Virus record (IMG/VR): IMGVR_UViG_3300020473_000013
Span: 1 to 64,000 of that record
DNA length: 64,000 nucleotides
Reading direction: 5' to 3' (one strand)
The notes beneath the pieces are model-generated. The model worked only from the letters and a program-made list of their open reading frames with translations, made no database searches and was not told where the DNA came from. Positions 15,105-29,894 of the stretch are shown piece after piece. Each line of letters starts with the position of its first letter. The stretch's first letter is position 1. The position numbers and the translations under genes were made by a program.

Positions 15105-15108
15105 TCCA

Positions 15109-15768
15109 TCACCTGTTGTTTGTTGCAGGGTCAGCACCGAGAATCCAGTCCCCCGCGCGCAACTCTACCCTAGCACTGCCAGGATTGTTCGCGTTTCCTA
15201 AGCAGTGCTGGAGCGTATCGCCGATAGTAACATAGGGGTTGTTGGTGGCTTGCCGACGCACCCACGTTCCGCCTCCGTACTTGCCGTACTCCTCGTCGTG
15301 TGTGCGCTGCAGGAACACGGGCATCTGGTCCAAGTCGCGCGGTTTCTTGATGAGGACGTAACTGGCGCTGTCCGTGCCCCAGCTCAGGCCTCCGATGTCT
15401 AGCTCAGGCACCTCGTCGGGGCCCCAGTCCTGATCGTTGTTGCGCCAAGACTCAACGGCCGTGTAGTACGCCTCCAGTCCGATCTCCTGCACAGCGGCAC
15501 GGTAGTCCTCCTCATAGCGGATGGAGTGTGCGTTCTCCAACTGGCCTACAACGATGTCAGCCCAACCTTCCGTCTCGTGGTTGATGTGACGAAAGACGAA
15601 CATGGCGCTGGATACAGGAAGTGATACCCAATCGTTATCAGTACGGTGCTGGAGCATATCTCCATTCATCGCAATGGCGTTCTTGACATCTTCAGGAAGC
15701 TGCCCCTTACTAGGAACGGACAGCTCGTCAACGTCTCCTCCTATCAACCGCATCTGATCTATATTCAT
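15109..15768 (-). CDS. Array member: N-module plus unique acidic domain
   Basis: MNIDQMRLIGGDVDELSVP; C-domain unrelated to the other members. Confidence 0.75.
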   Translation of the reverse strand: MNIDQMRLIGGDVDELSVPSKGQLPEDVKNAIAMNGDMLQHRTDNDWVSLPVSSAMFVFRHINHETEGWADIVVGQLENAHSIRYEEDYRAAVQEIGLEAYYTAVESWRNNDQDWGPDEVPELDIGGLSWGTDSASYVLIKKPRDLDQMPVFLQRTHDEEYGKYGGGTWVRRQATNNPYVTIGDTLQHCLGNANNPGSARVELRAGDWILGADPATNNR

Positions 15769-15776
15769 GGGTTCAC

Positions 15777-16433
15777 CTAATACGCCAAAACTATTATGCC
15801 GCGGTCACCGTCGGTGTCTTCGGCCCCGCCGTTCCCTGCTTTGACAAGTCCTATTACGGGGACGTTTCCTTCTGCTCCCGCGCCGGGGGAGAATCTCGAA
15901 GGAGGAGGATTGCCGTTAGCTACATTGCCTTCACCGCCAGAAGCTACAGAGGTTGAGTTTCTGCCAGCCTGACCGCCGCCGGCTAAAGCGTGCTGTTGAC
16001 CGTTGTGCGTGACATAGGAAGAGCCTCCGCCTGAGCCCAAGTAGCTGTTCCTCCAATTTACTTCACCGCCTTTACCTACAGTCAAACTGATCTGGTCGCC
16101 AGGCTCAACGTCTAACTGTGCGTAAGACAAACCTCCGCCGGCACCTGCTACCCAGTTAGCACTACCGCTTGAGTTATAGTTGACGCCTGCACCGCCGCCT
16201 CCACCACAAGCAACGAACAGAGCGTACACGTTATCCGGCACCGTAAAGGTTGTTGAGGAAAAGAAGGATGCTTTAGCCGCAACAAAATCCCAGTCGTCGT
16301 TGCGTCCGACCATGAGCATTCCGTTGCTGCGACCTATAAACCCTAGAACTGGAGTCTCAGGCATGGAAGCTACATCCGGAATTCGGATGTAACCCATCGA
16401 GCCTCCTATCAGATTGGCATTCTCAATATTCAT
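15777..16433 (-). CDS. Array member: N-module plus short Gly-rich domain (subfamily A-like)
   Basis: Probable start MNIENANLIGGSMGYIRIP (ATG 16433); TFTVPDNV..LFV.C.GGGG motif. Confidence 0.75.
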   Translation of the reverse strand: MNIENANLIGGSMGYIRIPDVASMPETPVLGFIGRSNGMLMVGRNDDWDFVAAKASFFSSTTFTVPDNVYALFVACGGGGGAGVNYNSSGSANWVAGAGGGLSYAQLDVEPGDQISLTVGKGGEVNWRNSYLGSGGGSSYVTHNGQQHALAGGGQAGRNSTSVASGGEGNVANGNPPPSRFSPGAGAEGNVPVIGLVKAGNGGAEDTDGDRGIIVLAY

Positions 16434-16440
16434 AATTATA

Positions 16441-17460
16441 TCACTCCGCAATTTTGGTCACAGAAACCGTTCCGTGACTCGTGCCAACGCGGTTCTGTCT
16501 GATAACATTCGTTGCGCTCTCGCCAATAAAAGAAGTGCTGTACGATGTTCTTCCTCTGTACTGAGCTGCACCCGTAGACTCGGAACCTCCAGAGAAGCCT
16601 CCTCCGCCGGAACAGTACTGGTTGTGTACGTTGGAGCCGCGACCTCCGCCTCCTCCAAAGCCTCCGTCTCGTGTTCCAGTTCCACCCCATGCTAATTCCG
16701 ACAGACTGAGCCCTCCATTGTCCTGCGGCGCATTAGAGAACCAGCTACCTCCTGGTCCTCCTATATCGACCCTACCGCCGGCCACATAGTAAGGGTCTCC
16801 GGCGGTAAAGGCGGTAGCGTCCACGATGTTTGGCGCTCCACCGTCGCTGTAGTTGCCTCCTCCTGCACCCCCTCCTGCTAGGATCAACGGGAACGTCTGA
16901 CCTTGTATCTGTGCAAAGGAGGCGCCTCCTCCTGCACCTCCTCCTCCTTGACTGCCTGTTCCGATTCCTCCGTTGTCTGCACCTGCTTGACCTACGACGA
17001 TACGCAATTTGTCACCTTTACTGAGCAGGAACACTCCTTCCAGCATGGCTCCGTGCCCGAAATGATTGTACGCTGCAGGTCGCCCTCCTCTAGCTCCGAC
17101 TGCACGGATTCGATATGCACCGTCTGCAGGGATGGTCCAAATTTGGGAGCCGTTCTGAACGTCGAAAAAGAGAGAGTCGTTAGCCCAGACAGATGCTTCA
17201 TCACTGGTATAGCTTGTCACGCACTGAGTCAGTGTTGGTCCGTATCTTCCGGTCGATCCTGCCGTTGTAAATGTGTGTGATGAGAACTCGAACAGTCCTG
17301 CTGTTGTAGGTAGAAGAACTACCTCTCCGCTTTGTCCGTTCTTAAAGCCTATTGAACCTTGCGATGCGACGATTGCTCCCGGCAATTCGTCTCCCTTATA
17401 CGCTGGGATGGAGATACGTCCTATGTCTCCTCCAACCAGTTTAACATCATCAAAATACAT
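16441..17460 (-). CDS. Array member: N-module plus ALK/LTK-like Gly-rich domain (subfamily B)
   Basis: Start moved to MYFDDVKLVGGDIGRISIP (ATG 17460); WTIP..G.Y.I.A.GARGG...GA.L.G.F.L..G..L.I.VGQ.G motif. Confidence 0.78.
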   Translation of the reverse strand: MYFDDVKLVGGDIGRISIPAYKGDELPGAIVASQGSIGFKNGQSGEVVLLPTTAGLFEFSSHTFTTAGSTGRYGPTLTQCVTSYTSDEASVWANDSLFFDVQNGSQIWTIPADGAYRIRAVGARGGRPAAYNHFGHGAMLEGVFLLSKGDKLRIVVGQAGADNGGIGTGSQGGGGAGGGASFAQIQGQTFPLILAGGGAGGGNYSDGGAPNIVDATAFTAGDPYYVAGGRVDIGGPGGSWFSNAPQDNGGLSLSELAWGGTGTRDGGFGGGGGRGSNVHNQYCSGGGGFSGGSESTGAAQYRGRTSYSTSFIGESATNVIRQNRVGTSHGTVSVTKIAE

Positions 17461-17461
17461 A

Positions 17462-18244
17462 TCACACGTCCTGTACGTTAGTGGTTGGAAAGGAACGACC
17501 CTCGCCCCAGATAATGCGGATACCGCCGTCATCCCCTGGACTGCCTCCGGATTGAGGCCAACCGCCGTTGCCTCCGCCTCCTGCGATTATGCCGACTTGT
17601 GAGCCTCCACCGGAGCTACCGCCGTAGGATAGGCCGTTGTGATGGCTAGATTCACCTCTATCTCCCGCGTCCCCTGTTTTGTACGTACCCGTACCTCCAG
17701 GACCTCCATCGCCTATCGCGAACATGCCTAAGGAGTCTTCGCCTGCGGTTCCCCCTGAGGCTTGAGTGACGACAGTGTTGTCGGCGTCGCGACGGAAAAT
17801 CGTGTTTCCTCCGTCTGCGTCGGATGAACCGCCGTGACCAACAATAGCAGTGAACGTCTCCCCAGGTTCTACGACAAGGAAGTTCTCGTAGGATTCGCCT
17901 CCGGCTCCGCCGGCTCCGCCTACCTGATCGTAGTAACTGCTCCCTCTATTCGATCCTCCACGGCCGCCTCCGCCGCCTGCTCCTATAACGAACACGCTAA
18001 TCTGCGTGACGCCGTCAGGAACCGTAAATGTAAACGAACCTCCGTTTGCGTAATTGATTTGGCCTGGAGGAATAGGCTTCGTAGGAACGACATCCCACAC
18101 GTTGTCAGGTTTGGCTCTACGTATGGAGCCGTTTTTTACCATAAGCAGATTCTCCTGCGCCACAGAAGGAAGCTCTGGTGTGTTTGGTATAGAGAAGGAA
18201 CGTATTGATCCTCCGGACAGTTTGATACCGCCATCCATATTCAT
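17462..18244 (-). CDS. Array member: N-module plus Gly-rich domain (subfamily A)
   Basis: MNMDGGIKLSGGSIRSFSIP; ends GGIRIIWGEGRSFPTTNVQDV. Confidence 0.8.
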   Translation of the reverse strand: MNMDGGIKLSGGSIRSFSIPNTPELPSVAQENLLMVKNGSIRRAKPDNVWDVVPTKPIPPGQINYANGGSFTFTVPDGVTQISVFVIGAGGGGGRGGSNRGSSYYDQVGGAGGAGGESYENFLVVEPGETFTAIVGHGGSSDADGGNTIFRRDADNTVVTQASGGTAGEDSLGMFAIGDGGPGGTGTYKTGDAGDRGESSHHNGLSYGGSSGGGSQVGIIAGGGGNGGWPQSGGSPGDDGGIRIIWGEGRSFPTTNVQDV

Positions 18245-18255
18245 GAGTTCACCTT

Positions 18256-18837
18256 CTAAGTTTCGTAGACCGCTCCGTCCACAGCGCTTATCTGCATGTG
18301 ATCTAAATTAGGTCCGCTACTTCCGGTGGCCTGTAAGCGAATCGTGTTGGTTCCTATCTCCAGATTGACCCTATGTGTTTCGGTCGTCCACTGTAGCGCC
18401 GAACTGCTATAGTTGCTCAGCGGAACCCGTTTCACTTTCACGCCGTTGATATACAGGTCCTGAGCACGATTGTCGATGGCGTAGCGGAACGTCAAGTCAA
18501 ACGGACCCGCGGCCAGCGACGGAACCTGCCATTCTACGTAGGCATCACGAGTTGCGGTGTAGTCGAAGAAGCCGCTGCCTGTGTACCCCGAATGGTTGTT
18601 CGTTACGTTTCCGCCTTCCAGTCTGTGCGCGTCCTCTGCCTCGTACACTCCGACCGGAGCATCGCTTTCTGGATCGAACCCCAAAACGACAGGAATAGGT
18701 TCCCACCCCTGGGAATCTCGAAACGCTTGAATGTTTCCGTACTCGACCCTCAGCGCGCCAGGGTCTGTCGGGCTCGTGGAAGGCAATGCTAGTGCTTCGA
18801 TGTCTCCTCCGCTGAGCGTCAACTTGTCCAGTTTCAT
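18256..18837 (-). CDS. Array member: N-module plus CBM35/CBM6-like carbohydrate-binding module
   Basis: YEAEDA...HSGYTGSGFFDY...LTFRYA...L.IGTNTIRL...GPNLD matches the CBM35/CBM6 pattern. Confidence 0.8.
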   Translation of the reverse strand: MKLDKLTLSGGDIEALALPSTSPTDPGALRVEYGNIQAFRDSQGWEPIPVVLGFDPESDAPVGVYEAEDAHRLEGGNVTNNHSGYTGSGFFDYTATRDAYVEWQVPSLAAGPFDLTFRYAIDNRAQDLYINGVKVKRVPLSNYSSSALQWTTETHRVNLEIGTNTIRLQATGSSGPNLDHMQISAVDGAVYET

Positions 18838-19688
18838 GACATCAACTCCAGGACTGGTCTCCAGCCGTTGTAGGTAGTTCGACCAGAGCCGGTGAATCCG
18901 CTACCTGTAGCCCACGCCGAAGTGATTCCGTATCCTCCGCGCTTCAACCAAGCGTTGTCGCGCATCCTATACGACTCCATGCAGTAAGCCCACTGGCCGA
19001 CTAATCCGGCGTTATCGGCGACGCCTAGATCGACTTGGGAGTAATCTGCTAGGTTGCCCAAAGACTGGGAGGCTGGAACTGAGGCACACAGCCGGTATAG
19101 CAGTCGATTCCATTCAGACCCAAGAGACTCGTCGGTATCGTACCCTGTACTAGCGTTAAAGGAGTCGGAACTCGATCCCCTTAGGAGGCGCACCCTGTAG
19201 AGATCACCGTTTATCTCAACGGTAGCATCCTGTAGCACAGGAGAAGAAGGTGGGTAAGGTCCGTAAGTGTTGTCTCCGTGGACAGCTCCAACATTGTATA
19301 TGTCAAGCCACGACACATCGTTGCGTAGAGCACGCTGAGGAAGGAACACCACCTTACCATCTAATGCACATTTGAGCCAAGGGTAGCTGTCATAAATGGA
19401 ATTACCCTGAGTAAGACCTATGGACTGGGCCAAAGAGCTGCCTGAGATAAATTCTGTTGGAGCAACCTCGCCAAAGAAACCGGCGGCCATGTCTCCAGCG
19501 ATCAGTTCGGCAGGACCTACACCTAGGGACGCGGACGGAAGCGAGGACCATGCCTGGTTACGCTTTACCTTAACATTGCCCCCGTTAATGCAGATTCGAC
19601 CCAATGAAGGACTCTCGGGCAGCGCAGGTTCTTCGGGCACGGAAACGTTCATATCGCCTCCCACCAGTTTTGTTCTGTCTATGATCAT
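18834..19688 (-). CDS. Array member: N-module plus subfamily C domain
   Basis: Start moved to MIIDRTKLVGGDM (ATG 19688); ends GWRPVLELMS. Confidence 0.78.
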   Translation of the reverse strand: MIIDRTKLVGGDMNVSVPEEPALPESPSLGRICINGGNVKVKRNQAWSSLPSASLGVGPAELIAGDMAAGFFGEVAPTEFISGSSLAQSIGLTQGNSIYDSYPWLKCALDGKVVFLPQRALRNDVSWLDIYNVGAVHGDNTYGPYPPSSPVLQDATVEINGDLYRVRLLRGSSSDSFNASTGYDTDESLGSEWNRLLYRLCASVPASQSLGNLADYSQVDLGVADNAGLVGQWAYCMESYRMRDNAWLKRGGYGITSAWATGSGFTGSGRTTYNGWRPVLELMS

Positions 19689-20389
19689 TCTACTAGCTCC
19701 AAGACGGGTCTCCAACGTAGGTATTGGTACCCGTTGGAACTTGCGACATTCGGATTACCGCGGTTGGCGTAGTTGTTATCTCCTAGCAAACAGGTGCTAT
19801 ACAGGTTGTCTCCAACGTCAATCTCGGCAGGGTCGTAGGACGCCCAGCGCTGGTCAACAGATACCGGGCTGTCGCTGCTGATCATATACATTAGGTCGTC
19901 CCATTCCTGGTCAGTTAGGAGGCGTACCTTGTATGTATCCGAACCTATAGCCAGTGTGGTGTTACCGTACACCAAATCCTTGTTCTTGAGAGTGCTCCAC
20001 CCTATATTGTTTCCTGCGTGACTAGCTCGAATAATCATCTTCGAGTAGAACAGGACCTTATCGCTGTGTGCGAACTTCAACCAATCTGTGTCTCCTCCGA
20101 ATAACTTGCCGGCATACATGCCTAGCTCGCCGCAAAGCGTAGAACCGTCGATCAAGTCCAAGTTACTCACTACACCGAAGAAGCCTGCAGACATGGTACC
20201 GCCTATCAGCTCCGAAGCTCCGGGACCTACGAAACCTAGATTAGTCGGCAGGGAGACCCAGGCTTGACCGTGGGCAACTGCTATACGGCCATTGGTAACT
20301 CCTAGTTTATAAGGTTCAGCCTCGCTTACATCGGGAAGCGACATCCTTCCTATATCACCTCCAACCAACCTTGTCTTGTCGAGTATCAT
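19685..20389 (-). CDS. Array member: N-module plus subfamily C domain
   Basis: Start moved to MILDKTRLVGGDIG (ATG 20389); ends WRPVLELVE. Confidence 0.78.
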   Translation of the reverse strand: MILDKTRLVGGDIGRMSLPDVSEAEPYKLGVTNGRIAVAHGQAWVSLPTNLGFVGPGASELIGGTMSAGFFGVVSNLDLIDGSTLCGELGMYAGKLFGGDTDWLKFAHSDKVLFYSKMIIRASHAGNNIGWSTLKNKDLVYGNTTLAIGSDTYKVRLLTDQEWDDLMYMISSDSPVSVDQRWASYDPAEIDVGDNLYSTCLLGDNNYANRGNPNVASSNGYQYLRWRPVLELVE

Positions 20390-21195
20390 TCCTCCACCTC
20401 CAGTACAGGGCGCCACCCTCTATAGCTGCTTGCATCATCGGCACTTCGGAAGTAAGTATCATACGCAGAATTGACACCATGAAGTAGTCTGTCAGGACCT
20501 TTGGACTCCTGGCACCATGTTTGGCCACTGTTGATAAATCCCATGTCTCTATCTGAGAATGAGGCCCATGTGCCGTCTGTCGTAGGAACGATCAGCTTTG
20601 TCCATTCAGAATCGCTCAAGGATGAATGCCGCGTATCCGTCTCGTCTTGAGCATTTGAAGGATCATCGGACGAACCCGTCAGCAAACGTACCTTATACGT
20701 TATGTTCCCGATTGTCACGCGCCCGCTCTGCCTTCTCTGCGTTCCCGAGGGAAAGCGACCGTACGTGTCGTCGCCGTACACTAGACCTAGCAGGTAAAGC
20801 TGTTCCCAAGATACTCCGGTCTTGATGCCCCGCTGAGCCACGAATAAGGTGCGCCCGTTGTGAGCGTACTTGAACCACATTCCTACTGTATGGTCTTCTA
20901 CGAAGGCACCAGGCACACCCAGCTGGGAAGACAAATCTGAGTAGCTAATTAGATCGCTTTGCGGTATGTGTCCGAAATACCCAACGTCGCTATCACCGAA
21001 CGCTATCTTGGACGGGCCAGGACCTGCACCTAAGAGGGAAGCGGACGGTATGTTGCTCCAATTCAAGTCTTCTGTCGCTACGCCTAGGCTTCCTCCCGCC
21101 ACACCCAATTCGTTGGTACTGGGGTTAGTCGATCTTTCTGGCAAGGATAAAAAATCAACGTCTCCGCCGACCAGTTTCATACGTTCGAGTTTCAT
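20386..21195 (-). CDS. Array member: N-module plus subfamily C domain
   Basis: Start moved to MKLERMKLVGGDVD (ATG 21195); ends GWRPVLEVEE. Confidence 0.78.
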   Translation of the reverse strand: MKLERMKLVGGDVDFLSLPERSTNPSTNELGVAGGSLGVATEDLNWSNIPSASLLGAGPGPSKIAFGDSDVGYFGHIPQSDLISYSDLSSQLGVPGAFVEDHTVGMWFKYAHNGRTLFVAQRGIKTGVSWEQLYLLGLVYGDDTYGRFPSGTQRRQSGRVTIGNITYKVRLLTGSSDDPSNAQDETDTRHSSLSDSEWTKLIVPTTDGTWASFSDRDMGFINSGQTWCQESKGPDRLLHGVNSAYDTYFRSADDASSYRGWRPVLEVEE

Positions 21196-22022
21196 TGTAC
21201 CAACTCCAGAACGGGTCTCCATCCGCAAATATCTGTGTGTGTAGTTGATGACCTGCGCGTCATATCCGACACTCCGTTACATCCTCTGGATATGTAGGCT
21301 CCAGTCCCAGCGCCTTGTTCCTCTTGGCACCAACTATACGTGCCGTGTCCTAATGAAGTGTGGACGTGTAAGTCTCTATCTGAGTATCGTGCCCAATCAC
21401 CGTCAGTAATTCCTTCGGACTCTAAAGTATCGCTTGAACTGATAGATACTCCACTGGCGATATGGTACATCAGACTATTCCATTCCGACCCGTGTGTCGT
21501 GGGCAGATCGTACCCCCAAGGAGGAGATGTTAGGGCAGGATTATAGCGCGATCCACTAGGCAAGCGAACTTTGAACGTTACCCCGTCGATAACCACTTCG
21601 GCCTCTCCGAATACGGCACCTACCGCATCTATGCTGTCCCAACTAAGACCGTAACGCAAAGGTTTTTTAGCGTAGTAAAGGACTTTATTTTTGTAGGAAA
21701 ACTTTAACCACCCTGCATTTGAAAACTGCGAGGTTCCTGAATATAGTCCTATAGCGTCAGACAGGGAGTTTCCGCTAATCAATTCGTCCGCGGCCACCTC
21801 TCCGAAGAACCCAGCCGACGCATCTCCTCCTATGAGTTGTTGGGGACCAACACCGTTACGCTTAGTGTGGATTGTGGTCCAATTGTCGTTCTTGCCCAAT
21901 CTAAGGCCACCTTGGTGTCCGAGTAGTTCGTTCTCTGACACATCGACAGGAAGCGTACTCACATTAGGTACAGATATGTCGGCAATGTCTCCTCCAACCA
22001 ACTTCATTCTATCTAGTTTCAT
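21192..22022 (-). CDS. Array member: N-module plus subfamily C domain
   Basis: MKLDRMKLVGGDIADISVP; ends GWRPVLELVQ. Confidence 0.8.
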   Translation of the reverse strand: MKLDRMKLVGGDIADISVPNVSTLPVDVSENELLGHQGGLRLGKNDNWTTIHTKRNGVGPQQLIGGDASAGFFGEVAADELISGNSLSDAIGLYSGTSQFSNAGWLKFSYKNKVLYYAKKPLRYGLSWDSIDAVGAVFGEAEVVIDGVTFKVRLPSGSRYNPALTSPPWGYDLPTTHGSEWNSLMYHIASGVSISSSDTLESEGITDGDWARYSDRDLHVHTSLGHGTYSWCQEEQGAGTGAYISRGCNGVSDMTRRSSTTHTDICGWRPVLELVQ

Positions 22023-22033
22023 ATCTCACCTTT

Positions 22034-23068
22034 TCAATCCAAACGGGTAACTGATACCCAACCGTTACCGCTATTAGAATTGGCTACGTTATGTTGGTTG
22101 GAGCCAGAATTGTAGGAGCCTCCACCGCCTCCTCCGTTACGTCCGTCGGGATTCCCACCAAAATTAGAGTCGTAGTCGCCTCCGCCTCCTCCGGAATAAC
22201 CTCCACCTCCTCCGGCGCCGTGAGAGTCCACGCCTAAGCCTCCTCCTCCGAATCCTGCTTGTTGCTTATAACCGGAGTTGGTAAATCTTCCTGTGAAAGA
22301 TAGCGACTGGCGCATGGACGTCCAGCCTAGAGCACCGTCCGCGTATAAGGCATTTCCGCCGTTTCGTCCTCGGTTGAACAACGACGTAGCCCGAGAAGTG
22401 GTTCCGTCTACAGACGTTGTGCCTCCAACACCTATCAGATTTGCCGTAGAGTAACTGGTGTTGATTATAGCGGAGCCGCCTCCACCGCCTGCTACGATCA
22501 AAGGATTCGAGGCACCTTGCAACCATACGAACGAACCTCCGCCGCCAGGACCGCCTCCATTCGCACGATTACCCTCAATGTTTTCGAGCCCTTCTTGGCC
22601 CACTACAATGCGTAGTTGTTGCCCCTTGACCAGGTCGAAGGTGCCTTCCATGATAGCGCCTTTACCTCGATACGAGTCCGGGACGACTCCGCTAGAGGAG
22701 TTAGGTTTGCCTCCTCTAGCGCCTGCGACTTCTAACTTATACGATCCTGTAGCTGGAACTGTCCACGTCTGAATCCCAGAAGTTACCTCAAAAAGAGTAG
22801 GGTCGTCAGACCAGTCAGAGCTATATGCCGTTCGCAAAGCCTGAGCGCTGGGAGGAAGAGGTCCTGATCTACCTGCTGAGGTGAACACATGGGATGAAAA
22901 AGCGAACAGAGTAGCACCAGGAATGATTGATACTTCGCCTGAATCGTTCACGAACCCTGGGGTCCCTTCTCGAAGGGCGATTTGGTTTTTCTCATTGGAG
23001 TTCGTCTCACGCAATGACAAACCTCTAATAGAGCTGCCTACTAAATTGACCCCGCCTTCAAACTTCAT
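22034..23068 (-). CDS. Array member: N-module plus ALK/LTK-like Gly-rich domain (subfamily B)
   Basis: Start moved to MKFEGGVNLVGSSIRGLSLR (ATG 23068) after GGAGG. Confidence 0.78.
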   Translation of the reverse strand: MKFEGGVNLVGSSIRGLSLRETNSNEKNQIALREGTPGFVNDSGEVSIIPGATLFAFSSHVFTSAGRSGPLPPSAQALRTAYSSDWSDDPTLFEVTSGIQTWTVPATGSYKLEVAGARGGKPNSSSGVVPDSYRGKGAIMEGTFDLVKGQQLRIVVGQEGLENIEGNRANGGGPGGGGSFVWLQGASNPLIVAGGGGGSAIINTSYSTANLIGVGGTTSVDGTTSRATSLFNRGRNGGNALYADGALGWTSMRQSLSFTGRFTNSGYKQQAGFGGGGLGVDSHGAGGGGGYSGGGGGDYDSNFGGNPDGRNGGGGGGSYNSGSNQHNVANSNSGNGWVSVTRLD

Positions 23069-23081
23069 ACGGCCTCCAAAC

Positions 23082-23116
23082 GAAAAAGGGCGCAGATCAC
23101 GAAGACCCACGCCCTA
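23082..23116 (-). terminator. Intrinsic terminator after mini-protein pair
   Basis: Minus strand AGGGCGTGGGTC-TTCG(T)-GATCTGCGCCCT then TTTT. Confidence 0.7.
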
Positions 23117-23121
23117 GACTA

Positions 23122-23313
23122 TTAGACCACAGGGTCGCTGTCGGTCAACCACTTCCATGTAGACTCGCTGTACATGTACAGGCCAGGAGCGTTGTCGCCA
23201 TCCTGTTGCAACAGGTACACCAGAGCGTTCGCGTCAGGATCAGACGGGAGCTTATCTACGTTATCAGCCACCAGCGTGCTGGGGCCGTCGAACAGTGCGT
23301 TATCTACCAGCAT
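23122..23313 (-). CDS. Mini-protein B1 (63 aa), paralogue of 26658..26855
   Basis: Start moved to MLVDNALF (ATG 23313) after AAGGAG; pattern shared with B2: MLVD...NV..LP....(A/S).VY.....G..PG.Y......W. Confidence 0.75.
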   Translation of the reverse strand: MLVDNALFDGPSTLVADNVDKLPSDPDANALVYLLQQDGDNAPGLYMYSESTWKWLTDSDPVV

Positions 23314-23326
23314 GTCTTGGTCTCCT

Positions 23327-23503
23327 TTACGCAGGCATTTGAAGTAAGCGCCATGCAGAATCATGGCAATAGACACACAGACCGTGCTCGTCATGAACAA
23401 ACAACTGGCCCACGAGTGCGCTTTCAGGGAAGGTGGGACCTCCTTCCGAAATCAGTTTAGAATACCGATTGTCCCCTAGATCGGTTACACCGTCGAAGTT
23501 CAT
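23327..23503 (-). CDS. Mini-protein A1 (58 aa; not in ORF track), paralogue of 26865..27011
   Basis: Hand translation MNFDGVTDLGDNRYSKLISEGGPTFPESALVGQLFVHDEHGLCVYCHDSAWRLLQMPA*; AGGAGG RBS. Confidence 0.8.
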   Translation of the reverse strand: MNFDGVTDLGDNRYSKLISEGGPTFPESALVGQLFVHDEHGLCVYCHDSAWRLLQMPA

Positions 23504-23531
23504 GGTTGTGACCTCCTATGTTGAGTCGAGT

Positions 23532-23538
23532 TAAATTA
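23532..23538 (-). promoter_or_regulatory. TAATTTA putative late-promoter motif
   Basis: Intergenic, 29 nt upstream of ATG 23503. Confidence 0.5.
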
Positions 23539-23548
23539 TCCTGAATTG

Positions 23549-24595
23549 CTAGAGACGGACCACGGATATATAGCCTTCTCCACTGTTTGCTCCGGCTGAG
23601 TTCGATTGGACTTCACCGGCGTTGAAGCTGCCCCCTCCGGTAGGAACAACACCGTTGAGGCGGCCCGACTGTCCGAGCGTTCCGCCTATTCCTCCGCTGT
23701 ATCCTCCTCCGCCTCCTGCACCTGAGTTATCCGTGAAGGCCGCACCTCCTCCGAAACCTCCGTAACCTCTGCCGTAGTTAGGATGGTGTTCAACGCCTCC
23801 GGCAGCTCCGTTCCTCGGAGCGGAGCCCGGGTCACCAGGAGGGTTTCTAATGTGATGCCCTCGCTTTCCGTCCGTTAACCACCCTCCTCCTCCAGAACCA
23901 GTAGAGTATCTACCTATATTAGCTCCGCTGTTCCCTCCGTGTCCAGCAGTTGCCTTAGGTCCTGAACCACCACCGATGCTATTTGTAGGCTCCTCTGTAG
24001 CTGATCCTGGGCCTCCCGCTGATCTTTCGGCATGTCCACCTCCTCCGCCTGCGACAATCAGAGGTTGGACATCTGAGGCGTCAAAGAATACGTATGACCC
24101 GCCTCCGCCTCCTGCACCAAAGTCGGAATTCTGAGACGTTACGGCGCCTCTCTTGCCTACCAAGATTCGTACAGTATCGCCCTTTGACAGCCAAAAGTCT
24201 CCTCGAATGATAGCTCCAGCACCACCTCGATCTCCGCCTCCTTTCGCGCCCGCTGTTTCGATTCTGTACATTCCGGTTTTAGGAACTGTCCATATTTGAA
24301 CACCGTTCTCTACGCGGAACAGCGAAATGTCGGTCGTCCAAATCAAATTCGAGTAAAGCGCCTCGAATACCGAAGGCAAGCTAGCAGTTCTACCTTCACT
24401 GTGCCCTGCGGCAAACACATGAGAGGAAAATTCGTATATGATGGCCGGAGGTAAAGGCAGGTTTTCATTGCCGCGGCGAACAGCAAATTTACCTTGGCTA
24501 AACCCAAGCTCTCCGTTTAAAGCGGGCTCTGTGACAGGTACAGACAGTTTTTGTATGGAGCCTCCACTCAGTCTAATCCCTCCTTCCAGTTCCAT
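23549..24595 (-). CDS. Array member: N-module plus ALK/LTK-like Gly-rich domain (subfamily B)
   Basis: MELEGGIRLSGGSIQKLSVP; QIWTVPKTGMYRIETAGAKGG. Confidence 0.8.
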   Translation of the reverse strand: MELEGGIRLSGGSIQKLSVPVTEPALNGELGFSQGKFAVRRGNENLPLPPAIIYEFSSHVFAAGHSEGRTASLPSVFEALYSNLIWTTDISLFRVENGVQIWTVPKTGMYRIETAGAKGGGDRGGAGAIIRGDFWLSKGDTVRILVGKRGAVTSQNSDFGAGGGGGSYVFFDASDVQPLIVAGGGGGHAERSAGGPGSATEEPTNSIGGGSGPKATAGHGGNSGANIGRYSTGSGGGGWLTDGKRGHHIRNPPGDPGSAPRNGAAGGVEHHPNYGRGYGGFGGGAAFTDNSGAGGGGGYSGGIGGTLGQSGRLNGVVPTGGGSFNAGEVQSNSAGANSGEGYISVVRL

Positions 24596-24604
24596 ATTAT
24601 ACCT

Positions 24605-25669
24605 CTATAGTCGCGTGATTATCACCTTACCGTGGCCAGGGTTGGCTCCCGTCTGGTTCGTTTGATTACTGCCGGAGTTATAACTACCACCACCTCCACC
24701 TAACTGGTGGTTCGCTCCTGCACCTCCAGAGTACCCGCCACCTCCTGCTCCGCCTCCGGAACTACCGTGCGTAGCTCCGCCTCCTCCAAAGCCTCCATCC
24801 GCAGGACCTTGATAGCTGAGGCCGTAACTCCTATAGATTGTCTGTCCTCCTAGTCCGCCATATCGGAAGGCTCTGGGGCCAGGAGATTTTGTATAGTTGC
24901 TGTGAGAGGAATTTCCGTAAAATCCAGCCCCTGGCTCACCACCCTTGGTATCGTTTAGCGATCCTGCAGCGCCTCCAGACCCTCCTCGACCAAAACCCGA
25001 CGGGCTAGAGTCCCCACCCTTGGTTGAGTTCAATCCGTGCTGTCCGTTTCTAGCTGACCGGCTGGAGTTATCCATACCTCCGCCCCCTCCAGCTATAATC
25101 AAAGGCGAAGAATTGCCGGGGCTTGACCCTATCGCAACGAACGTGCCTCCTCCGCCCGCTGCGGAGTTGTGGTCAGACCGTTCGTAGTCTCCGTCCCCTC
25201 CTCTTTGTCCTACGAGAAGAAGCAATGTGTCTCCTTCCTCTAGCTGAAAATCGCCGGCCATCTTGGCGCCAAGTCCCCCTGTTCGGAGTCCGGACCCTGT
25301 CATCCCTGCTCCACCTTGAGCTCCGCAAACTTCTATCCTATACATGCCTGTGATAGGCACTGTCCAGTATTGGATGCCTCCTTCTACCTTAAAAAGCGAA
25401 GTGTCGTCTACCCAATCCACGCCCGCGTAAGCATTCCTACATTGAGTAAGAGAGGGTCCTGTGCGACCTGAGGCCCCAGCAGCAGTGAACATGTGGTAAT
25501 CGAAGTTGTACAGACCGCGTAAAGGAAGCGGTACCCACGCGTCACCGCGCCCCACACCCAGACCATTCTGCCCGACGCCGAGTTGGTTGTTTTTCACACT
25601 GACCGTCTTACTCGGAATGGTTAAACTTCTCAGGCTCCCTCCTACCAACTTTACCCTATCGTGTTCCAT
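24605..25669 (-). CDS. Array member: N-module plus ALK/LTK-like Gly-rich domain (subfamily B)
   Basis: Start moved to MEHDRVKLVGGSLRSLTIP (ATG 25669). Confidence 0.78.
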   Translation of the reverse strand: MEHDRVKLVGGSLRSLTIPSKTVSVKNNQLGVGQNGLGVGRGDAWVPLPLRGLYNFDYHMFTAAGASGRTGPSLTQCRNAYAGVDWVDDTSLFKVEGGIQYWTVPITGMYRIEVCGAQGGAGMTGSGLRTGGLGAKMAGDFQLEEGDTLLLLVGQRGGDGDYERSDHNSAAGGGGTFVAIGSSPGNSSPLIIAGGGGGMDNSSRSARNGQHGLNSTKGGDSSPSGFGRGGSGGAAGSLNDTKGGEPGAGFYGNSSHSNYTKSPGPRAFRYGGLGGQTIYRSYGLSYQGPADGGFGGGGATHGSSGGGAGGGGYSGGAGANHQLGGGGGSYNSGSNQTNQTGANPGHGKVIITRL

Positions 25670-25680
25670 AGTAACGATCT

Positions 25681-26661
25681 CTACATATTTTCGTGAACGA
25701 AAAACACCTTTCCTGTCAAGGGGTTGCGTACTAACGCGGGCCATCCTATGCGTTCACTCAGTTTATCAGAGGATTCGCCCCATTGTCCGTTGGCTCCACT
25801 AACCAGCCTGTTACTCTCCATACTAAAGAGGCGCTGGGCCGAGTCAGGTTGTTGTACATTCAAGTAGGTCGATCCGCTCTGACTGTACGTATAAAATCCG
25901 TAGCGAGCCTTTCCTGCGAACATAGATAGCTCGGGATGCTCGCCCAAATCCAATGTCAGAGGACCTAATTCAGCACTCGTATTGTACTGAGTGGCGGTCA
26001 CGGTGAAAAGGTTGCCTTGTCGAACAATACGAACGTCAGACCACCTTCCAGACCATCTGGAATATGTGGAAGCATTGATGCCTGCAAGCTCAGTACGCCC
26101 GCTGCTCACCGCCGGATTATAATACGATAGAGCGAACGAACTTCCAGGGATACCTCCTTGGTGCCGAGTAACTAGCAGCATGTGCGGGTTACCGTCAACG
26201 ATGACGGCAGCCATTACCAGGCCTATCATGTCGTCGTCGCTGTTATTCGACGTGAGGCGCGCGGAGAACTCATAGGCTTCGTACTGGTACAGGCTTAGGA
26301 TGGCGTTCGGGGTACCTACGTTTGTCGGCATGACAAAAGACCCGATTCCTTCATCGTAATACCAATCGTCCGCGTACCCTCCGTAGTTCGATCCCGCCTC
26401 ATAGAAGGTAGAACCGTGAGTACGCGGCCATGTATCAAACACGGTTTTCAGACCCGGCGCCGGATTATCCGCCATATACTGGTCTAGTTCGGCATCTGAC
26501 TCAAAAACAAACTCATCGAATTGAGGAAGTTCTTGCAAGGGAAAGGAAGCCAAGCGACCGTTGCTAAACGCCAACTTGTTGCCCGCTTGTACGTCGGGAG
26601 GGCTTTGAACAGTGGGCACTTCCATGTTCTCCATTTTTGTACGCGCCTGCTCGATTATCAT
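25681..26661 (-). CDS. Array member: divergent N-module plus lectin-like domain shared with the 1096-aa protein
   Basis: Start moved to MIIEQ (ATG 26661, ATGA overlap); NSDDDMIGLV motif. Confidence 0.72.
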   Translation of the reverse strand: MIIEQARTKMENMEVPTVQSPPDVQAGNKLAFSNGRLASFPLQELPQFDEFVFESDAELDQYMADNPAPGLKTVFDTWPRTHGSTFYEAGSNYGGYADDWYYDEGIGSFVMPTNVGTPNAILSLYQYEAYEFSARLTSNNSDDDMIGLVMAAVIVDGNPHMLLVTRHQGGIPGSSFALSYYNPAVSSGRTELAGINASTYSRWSGRWSDVRIVRQGNLFTVTATQYNTSAELGPLTLDLGEHPELSMFAGKARYGFYTYSQSGSTYLNVQQPDSAQRLFSMESNRLVSGANGQWGESSDKLSERIGWPALVRNPLTGKVFFVHENM

Positions 26662-26855
26662 GTTCCCTCCGGAAGCGGATTGGAGTACATGGACAGTAAC
26701 CACTGCTGGCCGTCATGGACATAGAATCCAGGAGGGTTACCATTCCACTCAACGATCATATAGACCGAGTCGCCCTCCTGTGAACTCTGCGGCAGCGATA
26801 TAACGTTCTTCGCTATCACAGGTCGCGACTGAACTTCTGGAGTATCCACCAACAT
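26658..26855 (-). CDS. Mini-protein B2 (65 aa)
   Basis: GAGGAGG RBS; paralogous to 23122..23313. Confidence 0.75.
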   Translation of the reverse strand: MLVDTPEVQSRPVIAKNVISLPQSSQEGDSVYMIVEWNGNPPGFYVHDGQQWLLSMYSNPLPEGT

Positions 26856-26864
26856 ACGGCCTCC

Positions 26865-27011
26865 TCATTGTTCGATGACTTTACGCCACGCGCTATCGTG
26901 ACAGTAGATGCACAGTCCGTAAGAAGCGTGCCGGAATAGTTGACCTATCTCAGGCACGTTAGGGAATAAGTTGCCTTCTTCCACGTCCTCGCGCGGCGCG
27001 TCCGGATTCAC
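26865..27011 (-). CDS. Mini-protein A2 (48 aa; not in ORF track)
   Basis: Hand translation from GTG: MNPDAPREDVEEGNLFPNVPEIGQLFRHASYGLCIYCHDSAWRKVIEQ*; GLC(I/V)YCHDSAWR is shared with A1. Confidence 0.75.
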   Translation of the reverse strand: MNPDAPREDVEEGNLFPNVPEIGQLFRHASYGLCIYCHDSAWRKVIEQ

Positions 27012-27016
27012 GTTAT

Positions 27017-27193
27017 CTAGTCCGTCAAATTGCATGCCTCAATCCTCTTACGCTTATACTTGATGCCTGCCCACCTATTACAGCCGCGTCCGCGGTCAGT
27101 TCCTGTTCTGCAATCCAAGGCTGCACACAGCCCGCCCGAAATCATATCGTTCCGCAGCTTAATGAAGTGTCGGCACGAACCGCAATCTTTCAT
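27017..27193 (-). CDS. Small Cys-rich protein
   Basis: Probable start MKDCGSCRHF (ATG 27193); CxxC..C..C..C spacing, basic tail. Confidence 0.55.
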   Translation of the reverse strand: MKDCGSCRHFIKLRNDMISGGLCAALDCRTGTDRGRGCNRWAGIKYKRKRIEACNLTD

Positions 27194-27211: not shown

Positions 27212-27244
27212 AAAAAGGGCACGAGGAGCAAGGCCCCCGCGCCC
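27212..27244 (-). terminator. Intrinsic terminator
   Basis: Minus strand GGGCGCGGGGG-CCTTG-CTCCTCGTGCCC then TTTTT, after the 27277 stop. Confidence 0.65.
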
Positions 27245-27276: not shown

Positions 27277-27498
27277 TTAGCGCACGGCAGCGACGCCTGT
27301 ACGCGGGGACGAGAAAACGACCTTTACCTGCGTGTTGCTCATCACGATCACGTCCTGAGGAATGATCTTGCGAACCGCACCCTCATAGTCGATATATACA
27401 TCGACAGCAGGAGCATTGGTCCCCAGGTTGTGATTGATGATCCACTCCGCTGCCGCGATGGCCTGCGTGTGGTTGTGGGTGTATACTCCGATAGGCAT
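27277..27498 (-). CDS. Single small beta-domain protein (W.I.HNLG family)
   Basis: HTQAIAAAEWIINHNLG..P.V.V pattern also present in 27511, 28185 and 32543. Confidence 0.75.
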   Translation of the reverse strand: MPIGVYTHNHTQAIAAAEWIINHNLGTNAPAVDVYIDYEGAVRKIIPQDVIVMSNTQVKVVFSSPRTGVAAVR

Positions 27499-28184: not shown

Positions 28185-29894
28185 TTACGCGGCGGCTTTC
28201 AGACCGGTGACGATGACGCGGCACAGCTCCGACTGAGTGAAGGTCACGGCCAGGCTGTTGGCGTCGGTGTAGGTGATGCTCTCAGGGATGATCACCTCAT
28301 CGTTCTCGTCCACGACCTGCACCTGCACGTACTTGTTACCCATGTTGTGAGTAACGGTGTGAGAAGCGGCCGCGGCGCCGGTACCGTCGTACACGAAGTA
28401 GCCGTCCTGCAGGCGAGTCTCCACATCGGAAACGGCCTGATCGCGAGTGGCCAGAGCACCATCGAGGTGACCCTTGGACACAGCCACGGTAGCGGCAGAT
28501 GCGGACTGGTCGCTGCTGCTCAGGCGCAGCTCGCCGGTCATAGCCTCAGCGCCGTCACGGCCCAGGAAGGTATTGCGCAGCTCTGCGAGGTCAGCGCTCA
28601 CGCCGGTGCCGTCGACCACGATGCCGCTGTTAGCCGGAGTCTGAACAGACAGCGCAGTGCCGTCACCGCCCAGTAGACCGTTACCTGCAACGCTGCCGTT
28701 CAGTTGAGCTTCGGTGATACCGGAAGCCTTGACGCGAACGCCGGACGCTGAGGTCTCGACGGTGCTGTCGTCGGCCTTGACGTGGAGCTGGGCAGCGGTG
28801 CCGGTGCTCGGAGTCACGCCGTCTTCGGACAGCATCAGGCCGCCTTCGGTACGCAGGTCGACGCCGACTTCGTTGGTCGGGAGCTGACCGATACCTGCAC
28901 CCAGCAGGACGCTGACGACGTTGGACTCAGTGTCCTTCTCCAGACCGACACCAGCAGAGAAGCCGCTCAGGCCGCCGAAGTCATCCCAGGATACACCAGT
29001 CCAGTACTGGAAGTTGGCGATTGCCACGTTCCACGCCAGCACGCCCTGACCCTGAACGGACACGTCGTAGGCGACCACGAACTCGGCACCGTCATATTCC
29101 ACGATGTCGTTGTTCTCGACACCAGCGATGGTACCGAAGTTGGCGTGCAGGGCAGCCGCGTCTTCGATGATGTAGCGATCACCTTCAGACGGGGCAGCGC
29201 CCGGGTCCAGAGAAGCATCGACCTGCTTGTCGAGTACGTCCGGCTGGAAGTCGAGACCGGCCAGAGCGTTATCCAGGTCGATCTTACGCGCGGCGTCGTT
29301 AGCATTGACCGGGCTGCCCAGACCAGTGACGACATTGCCGCCCATGGCCAGGTTGCCGCCCATGGAATCGCCGGCCTTGTTCACCGGAGTGTATCCAAGA
29401 TCGGACTGCTTGGCATCGAGCTGTTCTTGGATGTTTGAGGTTGTACCGATCAGGTACTCAGCCTCGGCAGCAGTGGCGCTGGTGGTGGCAGTGATCTTGC
29501 CGCTGGCGTCAGTCACGACGATACGCTGGGTATCGAGGTCAGAAGAAGCGACAGTAGAGGCAGCACCTGTGATGGTGTCCTGCTTGCTGCCGAGCGCCGT
29601 TTCCAGATGACCCTTGGAAATAGCGGCTGTCTGGGCGCTAGCGCTCTGATCAGTACCGCTCAGCTCCAGGTCACCAGTCATCGGAGTAGAGCCGTCGAGC
29701 TTCAAGAACTCGGACAGGTCACCGCCACCAGAAGCCACGTTCTGGATGGTGGTACCGTCGTAGTATTTCAGAGCACCTTCAGTGGTGTTGAACCACATAC
29801 GGCCGATAGTCGGGGATGCGGGGTCTTCCGCAAGCTGCTCGACCTTCAGGTTCTTGATAAGGCCGACAACATTAAGGTTACCGTTAACACGCAT
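28185..29894 (-). CDS. Probable major fibre/whisker protein
   Basis: N-module (DPASPTIGRMWFNTTEGALKYYDG), fibre-type motifs YTPVNKAGDSMGGNL and PVNANDAARK, C-terminal HTVTHNMG domain; strong GC3 bias. Confidence 0.78.
   Translation of the reverse strand: MRVNGNLNVVGLIKNLKVEQLAEDPASPTIGRMWFNTTEGALKYYDGTTIQNVASGGGDLSEFLKLDGSTPMTGDLELSGTDQSASAQTAAISKGHLETALGSKQDTITGAASTVASSDLDTQRIVVTDASGKITATTSATAAEAEYLIGTTSNIQEQLDAKQSDLGYTPVNKAGDSMGGNLAMGGNVVTGLGSPVNANDAARKIDLDNALAGLDFQPDVLDKQVDASLDPGAAPSEGDRYIIEDAAALHANFGTIAGVENNDIVEYDGAEFVVAYDVSVQGQGVLAWNVAIANFQYWTGVSWDDFGGLSGFSAGVGLEKDTESNVVSVLLGAGIGQLPTNEVGVDLRTEGGLMLSEDGVTPSTGTAAQLHVKADDSTVETSASGVRVKASGITEAQLNGSVAGNGLLGGDGTALSVQTPANSGIVVDGTGVSADLAELRNTFLGRDGAEAMTGELRLSSSDQSASAATVAVSKGHLDGALATRDQAVSDVETRLQDGYFVYDGTGAAAASHTVTHNMGNKYVQVQVVDENDEVIIPESITYTDANSLAVTFTQSELCRVIVTGLKAAA

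What the first reader, a model, noticed from the sequence alone, without database searches (positions are those of the whole stretch)
23082..27011. Two duplicated pairs of mini-proteins that resemble the shared module alone, heading sub-blocks of the array
Pair 2 (26865..27011 + 26658..26855) precedes three passenger genes. Pair 1 (23327..23503 + 23122..23313) precedes fourteen and has its own TAATTTA motif, RBSs and terminator. The A-type minis share FP....(I/V)GQLF.H...GLC(I/V)YCHDSAWR; both were missed by the ORF track. Their P..P..G.L...W pattern matches the N-module of the array and fibre genes. Inference: passenger-less filler or adaptor subunits that co-assemble (e.g. A:B:cargo heterotrimers) so that one bulky tip domain is shown per site. 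The separate transcription unit would supply them in excess.
Basis: partly seen in the sequence, partly recalled or inferred. Interest (0 to 1): 0.78.

Follow-up and report, generated by a model that had tools for sequence, protein, structure and literature searches.

The report
Anchor-module-only mini-proteins in a fibre array
Two pairs of conserved 56-65-residue genes in a marine jumbo phage encode only the small N-terminal module that phage fibre proteins carry, and they probably act as shared partner or adaptor subunits for about 17 accessory fibre-like proteins.

Summary
All four small ORFs are real genes on the minus strand. A2 starts at 27035, not 27011. A1/A2 are 46% identical (E=2e-17) and B1/B2 29% (E=4e-7). 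Each has a Shine-Dalgarno site.

The same A-then-B arrangement recurs in at least 10 other uncultured jumbo-phage contigs, with dN/dS of 0-0.3. It nearly always sits at the head of, or inside, an array of N-module genes.

The A profile also matches N-termini of larger fibre-like proteins and internal DUF2793-type repeats. It matches the array N-module colinearly (hhalign E=9e-6, 83%). Predicted strand order is the same in A1 and an array N-module.

A1-B1 has a TAATTTA promoter-like motif, which I show is positionally enriched genome-wide. A -20.5 kcal/mol terminator follows B1. This stretch is the best-represented part of the region in marine metatranscriptome contigs.

The pairs are ancient paralogues, not recent copies. 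Each is closer to pairs in other phages than to the other. The Cys residues of CxYCH are not conserved.

The function is inferred: module-only partner or adaptor subunits of the accessory-fibre apparatus. The A:B:cargo heterotrimer idea is untested. No Pfam, PHROG or solved structure covers these proteins.

The parts
27217..27244 (-). Intrinsic-terminator-like hairpin plus U-run. It ends the upstream 569/214/73-aa operon and lies just before the pair-2 region.
   Evidence: 11 pairs, 8 GC; -22.6 kcal/mol, z=-3.7.
27017..27193 (-). Possible 58-aa Cys-rich ORF (MKDCGSCRHF...) with an SD. It overlaps the A2 start by 19 nt. Its status is uncertain.
   Evidence: no PHROG hit.
26865..27035 (-). miniA2, 56 aa, an A-type module-only protein. 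The start is corrected to the ATG at 27035. Its nearest relative is the A of L014 (54% identity).
26658..26855 (-). miniB2, 65 aa, a B-type module-only protein. It starts 9 nt after the A2 stop. Its own stop overlaps the next start (ATGA).
25681..26661 (-). 326-aa 'domain X' fibre-like protein (MIIE...) with a degenerate N-module. It follows the A-B pair in L013 and L014 as well. It is homologous to the middle of the collagen-like fibre that precedes A-B in the L004-L012 group.
   Evidence: E=0.08 to the array N-module; E=2e-12; 40% to L013/L014.
23549..25669 (-). Two array genes between the pairs: 24605..25669 (354 aa) and 23549..24595 (348 aa). Each is an N-module plus a glycine-rich (ALK/LTK-GRD-like) domain.
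23532..23538 (-). TAATTTA promoter-like motif, 28 nt upstream of the A1 ATG.
   Evidence: L008 has the same motif at the same spacing upstream of its miniA.
23327..23503 (-). miniA1, 58 aa, A-type. The AF2 model has residues 20-55 at pLDDT about 90 and four short strands. RNA-library contigs cover the whole gene.
23122..23313 (-). miniB1, 63 aa, B-type. It matches the N-terminus of phrog_22757 (E=8e-7). Its nearest relative is the B of L004 (57% identity).
23087..23115 (-). Intrinsic-terminator-like hairpin plus U-run, 7 nt after the B1 stop.
   Evidence: 12 pairs; -20.5 kcal/mol, z=-5.2.
11667..23068 (-). Fourteen array genes downstream of pair 1. Each is the shared ~50-aa N-module plus a varied cargo domain (glycine-rich short and long types, and others).
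   Evidence: (E from 1e-20 to 5e-14).

Best explanation
The four ORFs are genuine genes. They form two ancient paralogous pairs of 56-65-residue proteins.

Each protein is only the small N-terminal beta-module that phage fibre-like proteins carry ahead of a variable cargo domain. The module is a leader segment followed by a P..P..G..-hairpin-..W unit, related to DUF2793-type repeats.

The A-then-B pair is a conserved feature of a group of marine jumbo phages distantly related to PaBG and NCTB. It sits at the head of, or inside, arrays of N-module-bearing accessory fibre genes.

Most likely mechanism (inferred): A and B are small structural or assembly subunits of that accessory-fibre apparatus. 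They would use the same module-to-module contacts as the cargo-bearing N-modules. They could either join them in a mixed N-terminal stalk or form the adaptor onto which they dock. Either way they would be needed in larger amounts than any single array member.

The promoter-like motif and terminator around A1-B1, and the strong RNA-library representation of A1, fit that need.

Shown: the genes are real, conserved and under selection; the module is homologous to fibre N-termini; the link to arrays is conserved; the expression signals exist. Inferred: presence in the virion, the binding partners and the stoichiometry.
For: Genes are real:
- Strong SD sites.
- A family: 7 clusters of 56-58 aa among 5.8e9 proteins, plus further minis of 57-78 aa found by HMMER.
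- B family: 32 clusters, mostly 62-67 aa.
- dN/dS among relatives is 0-0.27 for A and 0.08-0.30 for B.

Module identity:
- The A profile hits the N-termini (positions 1-55) of 109-480-aa proteins with other C-domains, for example P0048 with F5/8-type C.
- It also hits 5-9 internal repeats in 600-1600-aa proteins. One of these, P0044, matches DUF2793 at 1.2e-11.
- hhalign: A vs array N-module E=9e-6; A vs 214-aa-family N-terminus E=7.6e-6; A vs phrog_22757-type N-termini E=1.6e-6; B vs the same E=1e-12.
- Strand order is the same in the A1 model (20-22, 34-37, 41-45, 51-53) and in an array N-module (13-15, 33-36, 39-44, 47-50).
- Structural neighbours of the A1 model are viral collagen-, Gly-rich-, fibrinogen-C- and PTL_trimer-carrying proteins.

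Context:
- A then B precedes N-module genes in L005, L006/L009/L010, L008, L012, L015, L016 and L017.
- In L018 the two minis are interleaved with array genes.
- A and B share the same nearest relatives, so they are inherited as a unit.

Expression: the TAATTTA motif is positionally enriched, a terminator follows B1, and RNA-library contigs over A1 have the highest depth in the stretch in both samples.
Against: - There is no direct evidence that A or B is in the virion or binds anything.
- Similarity to the array N-module is seen only at profile-profile level. HMMER gives E>1.
- L004/L011 keep the pair with no adjacent array.
- Pair 2 lacks the promoter motif and shows no RNA contig.
- The RNA runs are assembled contigs without strand information. 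DNA carry-over was not excluded.
- No significant match to any solved structure: Foldseek E>=0.6, VIA Z<=4.
Confidence: 0.5

Rival explanations
1. A strict A:B:cargo heterotrimer. One A, one B and one cargo-bearing N-module form a three-chain stalk, so each site shows a single bulky, monomeric cargo domain.
For: - A, B and the array N-module are three diverged versions of one module.
- A and B nearly always occur as one gene of each type and diverge together.
- A2, B2 and the 326-aa gene are packed with 9-nt and overlapping (ATGA) junctions. The same three-gene order is found in L013 and L014.
- Many cargo domains look monomeric: Gly-rich, LamG-like, RCC1/WD40.
- Higher expression of A1 than of individual array genes would fit a shared partner.
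Against: - Untested. No multimer model could be run.
- In the L004-L016 group the pair follows a collagen-repeat fibre. By general knowledge of collagen helices that fibre should already be a trimer.
- L004/L011 have the pair but no adjacent cargo array.
- To my knowledge no heterotrimeric phage fibre stalk is known.
Confidence: 0.2
2. Fibre-assembly helpers that are not part of the virion. A and B transiently bind nascent fibre N-modules or fibre ends, to prevent mis-pairing among about 17 paralogues or to aid folding, and are then released.
For: - In the minimal arrangement (L004/L011) the pair lies directly after the main collagen-like fibre gene and before the lysis genes. That is the usual place for tail-fibre assembly genes.
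- The proteins are small.
- A helper serving many clients would need high expression.
Against: - No similarity to any known fibre chaperone family in Pfam or PHROGs.
- The proteins are homologous to a structural N-terminal module.
- In the window, L013, L014, L015 and L017 the pair precedes its neighbouring fibre-like genes rather than following them.
Confidence: 0.15
3. Occupancy regulators or caps. The cargo-less modules compete with array proteins for a limited number of docking sites, or cap unused sites, and so tune how many accessory fibres are mounted.
For: - They carry the same kind of module as the cargo proteins.
- They have a separate promoter-terminator unit that could be regulated on its own.
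Against: - It does not explain why two distinct types, A and B, are kept together in nearly every lineage.
- A and B are much more diverged from the array N-module than array members are from each other. That is odd for direct competitors.
Confidence: 0.1
4. Non-functional leftovers: N-terminal stumps left by recombination or deletion among module-sharing genes.
For: Such a stump exists in relatives. A 55-aa array-type N-module-only ORF in L007/L009 sits where L005 has a 328-aa gene.
Against: - Length, start, motif and A-then-B order are conserved across more than 10 lineages, with dN/dS of 0-0.3.
- All four have strong SD sites.
- L015 carries a full phrog_22757-like gene next to the pair, so the pair is not a decayed copy of it.
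- No family of array-type stumps was found among 5.8e9 proteins.
Confidence: 0.03

Closest known systems
DUF2793 (Pfam PF10983) N-terminal domains of phage and GTA fibre proteins, e.g. DMS3 gp49, JBD26 gp59, RcGTA Rcc00171
   Same: They share the sequence logic: P..P..G, a hairpin, an aromatic residue, then W. The domain is a conserved N-terminus followed by highly variable C-terminal domains. It is proposed to attach the protein to the particle (bioRxiv 10.1101/150227; PMC5026251). The A profile hits repeats in P0044, which matches DUF2793 at 1.2e-11. The window's own 569-aa protein has a weak DUF2793 hit.
   Different: The minis do not reach the Pfam model (no hit at E<=1). They have an extra ~20-residue leader. 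They have no C-terminal domain at all.
phrog_22757, a ~190-aa protein of PaBG (PaBG_00260), NCTB (BN7874_118) and Erwinia phage Y3 (Y3_094)
   Same: It occupies the syntenic slot after the 569/200/70-aa genes, where the window has pair 2. Its N-terminal ~65 residues are homologous to B (E=8e-7 by HMM; hhalign E=1e-12) and to A (E=1.6e-6).
   Different: It carries a ~120-aa C-terminal domain that is absent from this genome. It is one gene, not a pair. L015 has both it and the A-B pair. Its function is unknown.
Anchor-only adaptor proteins of branched receptor-binding systems (SP6/K1-5 gp37 type; Klebsiella phage 'anchor-branch' systems, PMC6872550)
   Same: The concept matches: a protein consisting only of the particle-binding N-terminal module of a fibre, which lets several different receptor-binding proteins be mounted. 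This comparison rests on my own knowledge and PMC6872550.
   Different: No sequence relation was found (no Pfam or PHROG hit). Those adaptors are several-fold larger. Here there are two tiny types, A and B, and about 17 potential clients. Adaptor function is inferred, not shown.
PTL_trimer (Pfam PF26696, 'phage tail like trimerisation region')
   Same: ESM-Atlas clusters nearest to A1 and B1, by features and by shape, include proteins carrying this family.
   Different: The family is not in the Pfam copy at hand, so membership could not be tested.
Tail-fibre assembly proteins encoded after fibre genes (T4 gp38/gp57A, lambda Tfa, Mu U)
   Same: They are small genes placed directly downstream of a main fibre gene, as the pair is in the L004-L016 group.
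   Different: There is no homology. The minis resemble a structural N-terminal module. In the window's lineage they lie upstream of their neighbouring fibre-like genes.

Membership tests
DUF2793 (PF10983) | Sequence reaches the Pfam model's gathering score. | tested here: not met
   No Pfam family at E<=1 for A1, A2, B1 or B2.
DUF2793 (PF10983) | Homology to bona fide DUF2793 repeats through a profile. | tested here: met
   The A profile hits 9 stretches of P0044 (E=6e-14). P0044 matches DUF2793 at 1.2e-11; P0042 and P0047 match it weakly.
DUF2793 (PF10983) | N-terminal module followed by a variable C-terminal (receptor-binding or enzymatic) domain. | tested here: not met
   The minis end 5-10 residues after the module. 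Longer relatives (P0048, P0054, P0058, P0064, P0067) do have C-domains.
phrog_22757 | Full-length match (~190 aa) including the C-terminal domain. | tested here: not met
   B1 matches profile positions 28-65 of 193 only. tblastn with the NCTB, PaBG and Y3 proteins finds no C-domain in the genome.
PTL_trimer (PF26696) | Match to the family model. | not testable with these tools
   The model is absent from the library. Only Atlas neighbours carry it.
Shared N-module of this phage's fibre array | Detectable with the array N-module HMM. | tested here: not met
   The A5 HMM hits 16 array genes plus 2 elsewhere (E from 1e-20 to 2e-3), but A1 only at E=1.6 and B1 at E=8.
Shared N-module of this phage's fibre array | Colinear profile-profile similarity and the same secondary-structure order. 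| tested here: met
   hhalign A8 vs A5: Prob 83%, E=9e-6, positions 1-56 vs 1-52. Strand order is the same in both AF2 models. The array model has low confidence (pLDDT 61).
Tail-fibre assembly chaperones | Homology to a known chaperone family. | tested here: not met
   No Pfam or PHROG chaperone family was hit.
Anchor-only adaptors (SP6/K1-5 gp37 type) | Binds the particle and provides docking sites for several receptor-binding proteins. | not testable with these tools
   This needs interaction or structural data. Only the 'anchor module without cargo' architecture is shown here.
Cys/His metal-binding or disulfide mini-protein (CxYCH) | Conserved ligand residues across the family. | tested here: not met
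   The second Cys is T, G or S in P0006, P0007, P0040, L012 and L017. The first Cys is V in L015 and R in P0057.

The most novel reading that the evidence does not exclude
A and B are obligate partners that build a mixed three-chain N-terminal stalk with any one of about 17 cargo-bearing paralogues. That would be a heterotrimeric 'plug-and-play' mount displaying a single, otherwise monomeric, binding domain per site. Such an assembly principle has not been described for phage fibres. It would explain how jumbo phages carry large arrays of lectin-, Gly-rich- and propeller-type accessory proteins.
Probability: 0.2. Interest if true: 0.8.

Novelty: new variant of a known kind. Interest (0 to 1): 0.55.

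Why it matters
Large arrays of module-sharing fibre-like genes are common in jumbo phages and cyanophages. How so many different proteins are mounted on one virion is unknown.

A conserved pair of module-only mini-proteins at the head of such arrays is a concrete, testable candidate for the shared mounting or assembly component. They are 56-65 residues long, so they are easy to express and model.

The finding also adds two uncharacterised small-protein families that gene callers miss. The A gene was uncalled in L011. It yields a candidate promoter motif (TAATTTA) for an uncultured marine jumbo phage.

Tried and rejected
1. Decayed copy of the syntenic ~190-aa gene (phrog_22757). Rejected: L015 has that gene and the pair side by side.

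2. One gene split by a frameshift or stop read-through. Rejected: A and B are in the same frame in pair 2 and L012, but in different frames in pair 1 and L016.

3. Recent tandem duplication of a pair. Rejected: nucleotide identity is 45%, dS is saturated, and each pair is nearer to pairs in other phages.

4. Recent transfer of pair 1 together with its Gly-rich neighbours from an L005-like phage. No support: the window's Gly-rich proteins are closest to one another.

5. Each pair serves its own sub-block. No support from N-module similarity.

6. Solved-structure homologue. None is significant: phmmer/hmmsearch of the PDB, Foldseek, VIA-align. The only converging lead is the N-terminus of 7chu (Geobacillus virus E2 tailspike).

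7. Megablast of the region against the phage collection found no match.

8. Searching the full records of L009, L011 and L012 for array genes failed because those records are not held.

9. A search for stand-alone array-type N-modules among 5.8e9 proteins found nothing.

10. The PaBG paper gave no data on the relevant gene products.

11. The sigma-70 promoter scan showed only a modest excess (17 sites vs 11.0 +/- 2.9 in shuffles) and no site upstream of either pair.
Full report
WHAT THE WINDOW IS

The window is the first 64 kb of a single-contig, 224,853-bp virus record from a marine metagenome. Nearly all genes here lie on the minus strand.

The 569-aa protein (28185..29894) is 53% identical to a protein of Phage NCTB. 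It is 43% identical to the 'structural tail protein' of Pseudomonas jumbo phage PaBG and 37-38% identical to proteins of Erwinia 'hairy' jumbo phages such as Y3. Baseplate genes lie at 42-52 kb. This is the tail and fibre region of an uncultured jumbo myovirus.

From 25669 down to 11667 there are 16 consecutive genes that share a ~50-residue N-terminal module: M..D...L.GG.I..L..P, then G.L, then W. The cargo domains differ. Many are glycine-rich ALK/LTK-GRD-like domains.

One further gene (25681..26661, 326 aa) has a degenerate version of the module. Two more array-type genes lie at 187-188 kb, outside the window.

THE OBSERVATION

All four ORFs are present. A2 should start at the ATG at 27035. 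That start aligns with Met1 of A1 and of every homologue.

- A1/A2: 46% identity, E=2e-17.
- B1/B2: 29% identity, E=4e-7.
- Each of the four has a good SD sequence.
- The A-B spacers are 13 and 9 nt. The B2 stop overlaps the next start (ATGA).
- The counts of three and fourteen downstream genes are right.

ARE THEY GENES?

Yes. A profile of A finds seven clusters of 56-58 aa among 5.8 billion proteins. An exhaustive HMMER search adds further 57-78-aa minis. A profile of B finds 32 clusters, almost all 62-67 aa.

I fetched 14 contexts (L004-L018). The A gene is followed directly by the B gene in every one except L018, where a 347-aa array gene lies between them. In L011 the A gene exists but had not been called.

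For pairs of relatives with unsaturated synonymous sites, dN/dS is 0-0.27 for A and 0.08-0.30 for B.

WHAT THEY ARE

The A profile matches three kinds of protein in 1.84 billion representatives:
- other minis;
- the first ~55 residues of 109-480-aa proteins with unrelated C-terminal domains, for example an F5/8-type-C lectin domain in P0048;
- five to nine tandem internal repeats in 600-1600-aa tail proteins. One of these, P0044, matches Pfam DUF2793 at 1.2e-11.

B matches the N-terminus of phrog_22757 (E=8e-7). That is a ~190-aa protein occupying the slot after the 569/200/70-aa genes in NCTB, PaBG and Y3.

Profile-profile comparisons tie everything together:
- B vs phrog_22757-type N-termini: E=1e-12.
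- A vs the same: E=1.6e-6.
- A vs the N-terminus of the 214-aa family: E=7.6e-6.
- A vs the array N-module: E=9e-6, Prob 83%, colinear from residue 1.

The narrow seven-sequence A profile gave only P=0.004 against the array module. Plain HMMER does not connect the minis to the array. The relation to the array module is therefore distant.

The AF2 model of A1 has mean pLDDT 76, and about 90 for residues 20-55. Its leader is disordered. It has strands at 20-22, 34-37, 41-45 and 51-53.

A lower-confidence model of array member 15777..16433 shows the same order in its N-module: strands at 13-15, 33-36, 39-44 and 47-50, followed by a linker and the Gly-rich domain.

Shape neighbours of the A1 model in the ESM Atlas and BFVD are viral proteins carrying collagen repeats, Gly-rich, fibrinogen-C, Peptidase_G2 or PTL_trimer domains, plus other small viral proteins. 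TM by query is 0.58-0.71 in the Atlas; Foldseek probability in BFVD is 0.9-1.0 but E>=0.05 because the model is so short.

No solved structure matches significantly. The N-terminus of the Geobacillus virus E2 tailspike (7chu) is the only lead found by both sequence profile and shape.

The literature on DUF2793 proteins proposes that the conserved N-terminus attaches the protein to the particle while the variable C-terminus binds the host (bioRxiv 10.1101/150227; PMC5026251).

TWO PAIR LINEAGES, NOT A RECENT DUPLICATION

- A1 and B1 are closest to the pairs of the L004-L012 group (54% and 57% identity to L004).
- A2 and B2 are closest to those of L014 (54% and 44%).
- The two window pairs are only 43-44% (A) and 29% (B) identical, with saturated dS.

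The pair-2 type sits after the conserved 569/200/73-aa genes and before the 'MIIE' domain-X protein in the window and L013. L014, a 2.3-kb contig, shows the same A, B, MIIE order after a different 407-aa gene.

The pair-1 type follows a collagen-like fibre that contains the same domain X. It precedes Gly-rich N-module genes in L005, L006/L009, L008 and L016.

L015 and L017 have the pair after the 73-aa gene and before N-module array genes. L015 also keeps a full phrog_22757-like gene, so the pair is not a decayed copy of it.

In L004/L011 the pair is followed by a holin and by the lipoprotein-like gene that ends this block in L012 and L009. There is no array at that place.

EXPRESSION SIGNALS

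The two best terminator-like hairpins on the minus strand between 10.5 and 30 kb lie just before the pair-2 region (27244..27217, -22.6 kcal/mol) and directly after B1 (23115..23087, -20.5 kcal/mol, z=-5.2).

TAATTTA occurs 28 nt before the A1 start. The 11-mer around it is not enriched, but the 7-mer is. It occurs 19 times against about 6 expected. Eleven of the 19 copies lie 23-59 nt upstream of an SD+ATG, compared with a mean of 1.0 for random positions. L008 has the same motif at the same spacing before its A gene. Several relatives have a hairpin between the fibre gene and A.

There is no room for a promoter between the B1 terminator and the next start. The 14 downstream genes must therefore depend on read-through or on internal promoters.

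In four metatranscriptome runs from two samples, assembled contigs at 99% identity or more cover 23259-23716. That includes all of A1, and these contigs have the highest depth of the 4.4-kb stretch. Most array sequence and pair 2 have no contig.

This fits a higher RNA level for A1. However, the contigs carry no strand information, holes prove nothing, and DNA carry-over was not excluded.

MECHANISM

The data shown are: module-only proteins, two types kept together, a conserved link with N-module arrays, and separate, seemingly strong expression.

They are best explained by A and B being shared partner subunits of the accessory-fibre apparatus, working through module-module contacts. They would either co-assemble with cargo-bearing N-modules or act as the adaptor they dock onto (confidence 0.5).

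The tight A2-B2-326 cassette and the monomer-like cargo domains favour it. It could not be tested.

A non-virion assembly helper (0.15), an occupancy regulator (0.1) and non-functional stumps (0.03) are the rivals.

The CxYCH metal or disulfide idea is not supported. Neither Cys is conserved across the family.

NOVELTY

Neither mini family has a Pfam or PHROG assignment or a named member. The concept of an anchor-module-only adaptor is known from SP6/K1-5-type and Klebsiella branched systems (my own knowledge; PMC6872550).

A conserved pair of ~60-residue module-only proteins tied to a large paralogue array appears to be undescribed. I rate it a new variant of a known kind, with interest 0.55.

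Noticed in passing
window 27277..27498 (-): This 73-aa gene is a stand-alone copy of the Ig-like module that ends the 569-aa protein and occurs twice in the 214-aa protein (PHROG hits). It is conserved as a 70-78-aa gene in NCTB, PaBG, Y3, L013, L015 and L017. It is a second kind of 'module-alone' mini in the same operon.
   Followed up: partly
window 27017..27193 (-): Possible 58-aa Cys-rich ORF (MKDCGSCRHF...) with an SD site. It lies right after the terminator at 27244..27217 and overlaps the A2 start by 19 nt. It has no PHROG hit.
   Followed up: partly
whole genome; in the window at 10502, 11616, 18310, 23538, 32281, 44668, 59133 and 60750 (-): TAATTTA is over-represented about three-fold. 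Eleven of 19 copies lie 23-59 nt upstream of an SD+ATG. It is probably the core of a phage promoter.
   Followed up: yes
genome 187056..187577 (+) and 187580..188233 (+), outside the window: Two more genes with the array-type N-module plus a Gly-rich domain lie far from the main array.
   Followed up: no
L007 4169..4336; L009 4798..4965: A 55-aa ORF consisting of an array-type N-module alone sits where L005 has a 328-aa array gene. It looks like a deletion stump, which shows how module-only ORFs can arise. No such family was found among 5.8e9 proteins.
   Followed up: partly
L006 15952..16143; L005/L006 145-aa gene (L005 14930..15367): A lone B-like 63-aa gene heads a 576+203-aa cassette. That cassette is paralogous to a 612+208-aa cassette headed by a 145-aa protein with a B-like N-terminus. 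The large proteins have no N-module of their own.
   Followed up: no
L018 2731..4195: Here miniA and miniB are separated by a 347-aa array gene, and array genes also lie upstream of A.
   Followed up: no
window 10495..11586 (-): A 363-aa protein with RCC1-like repeats follows the array. Relatives L013, L015 and L017 also carry RCC1/WD40-type genes next to the minis.
   Followed up: no
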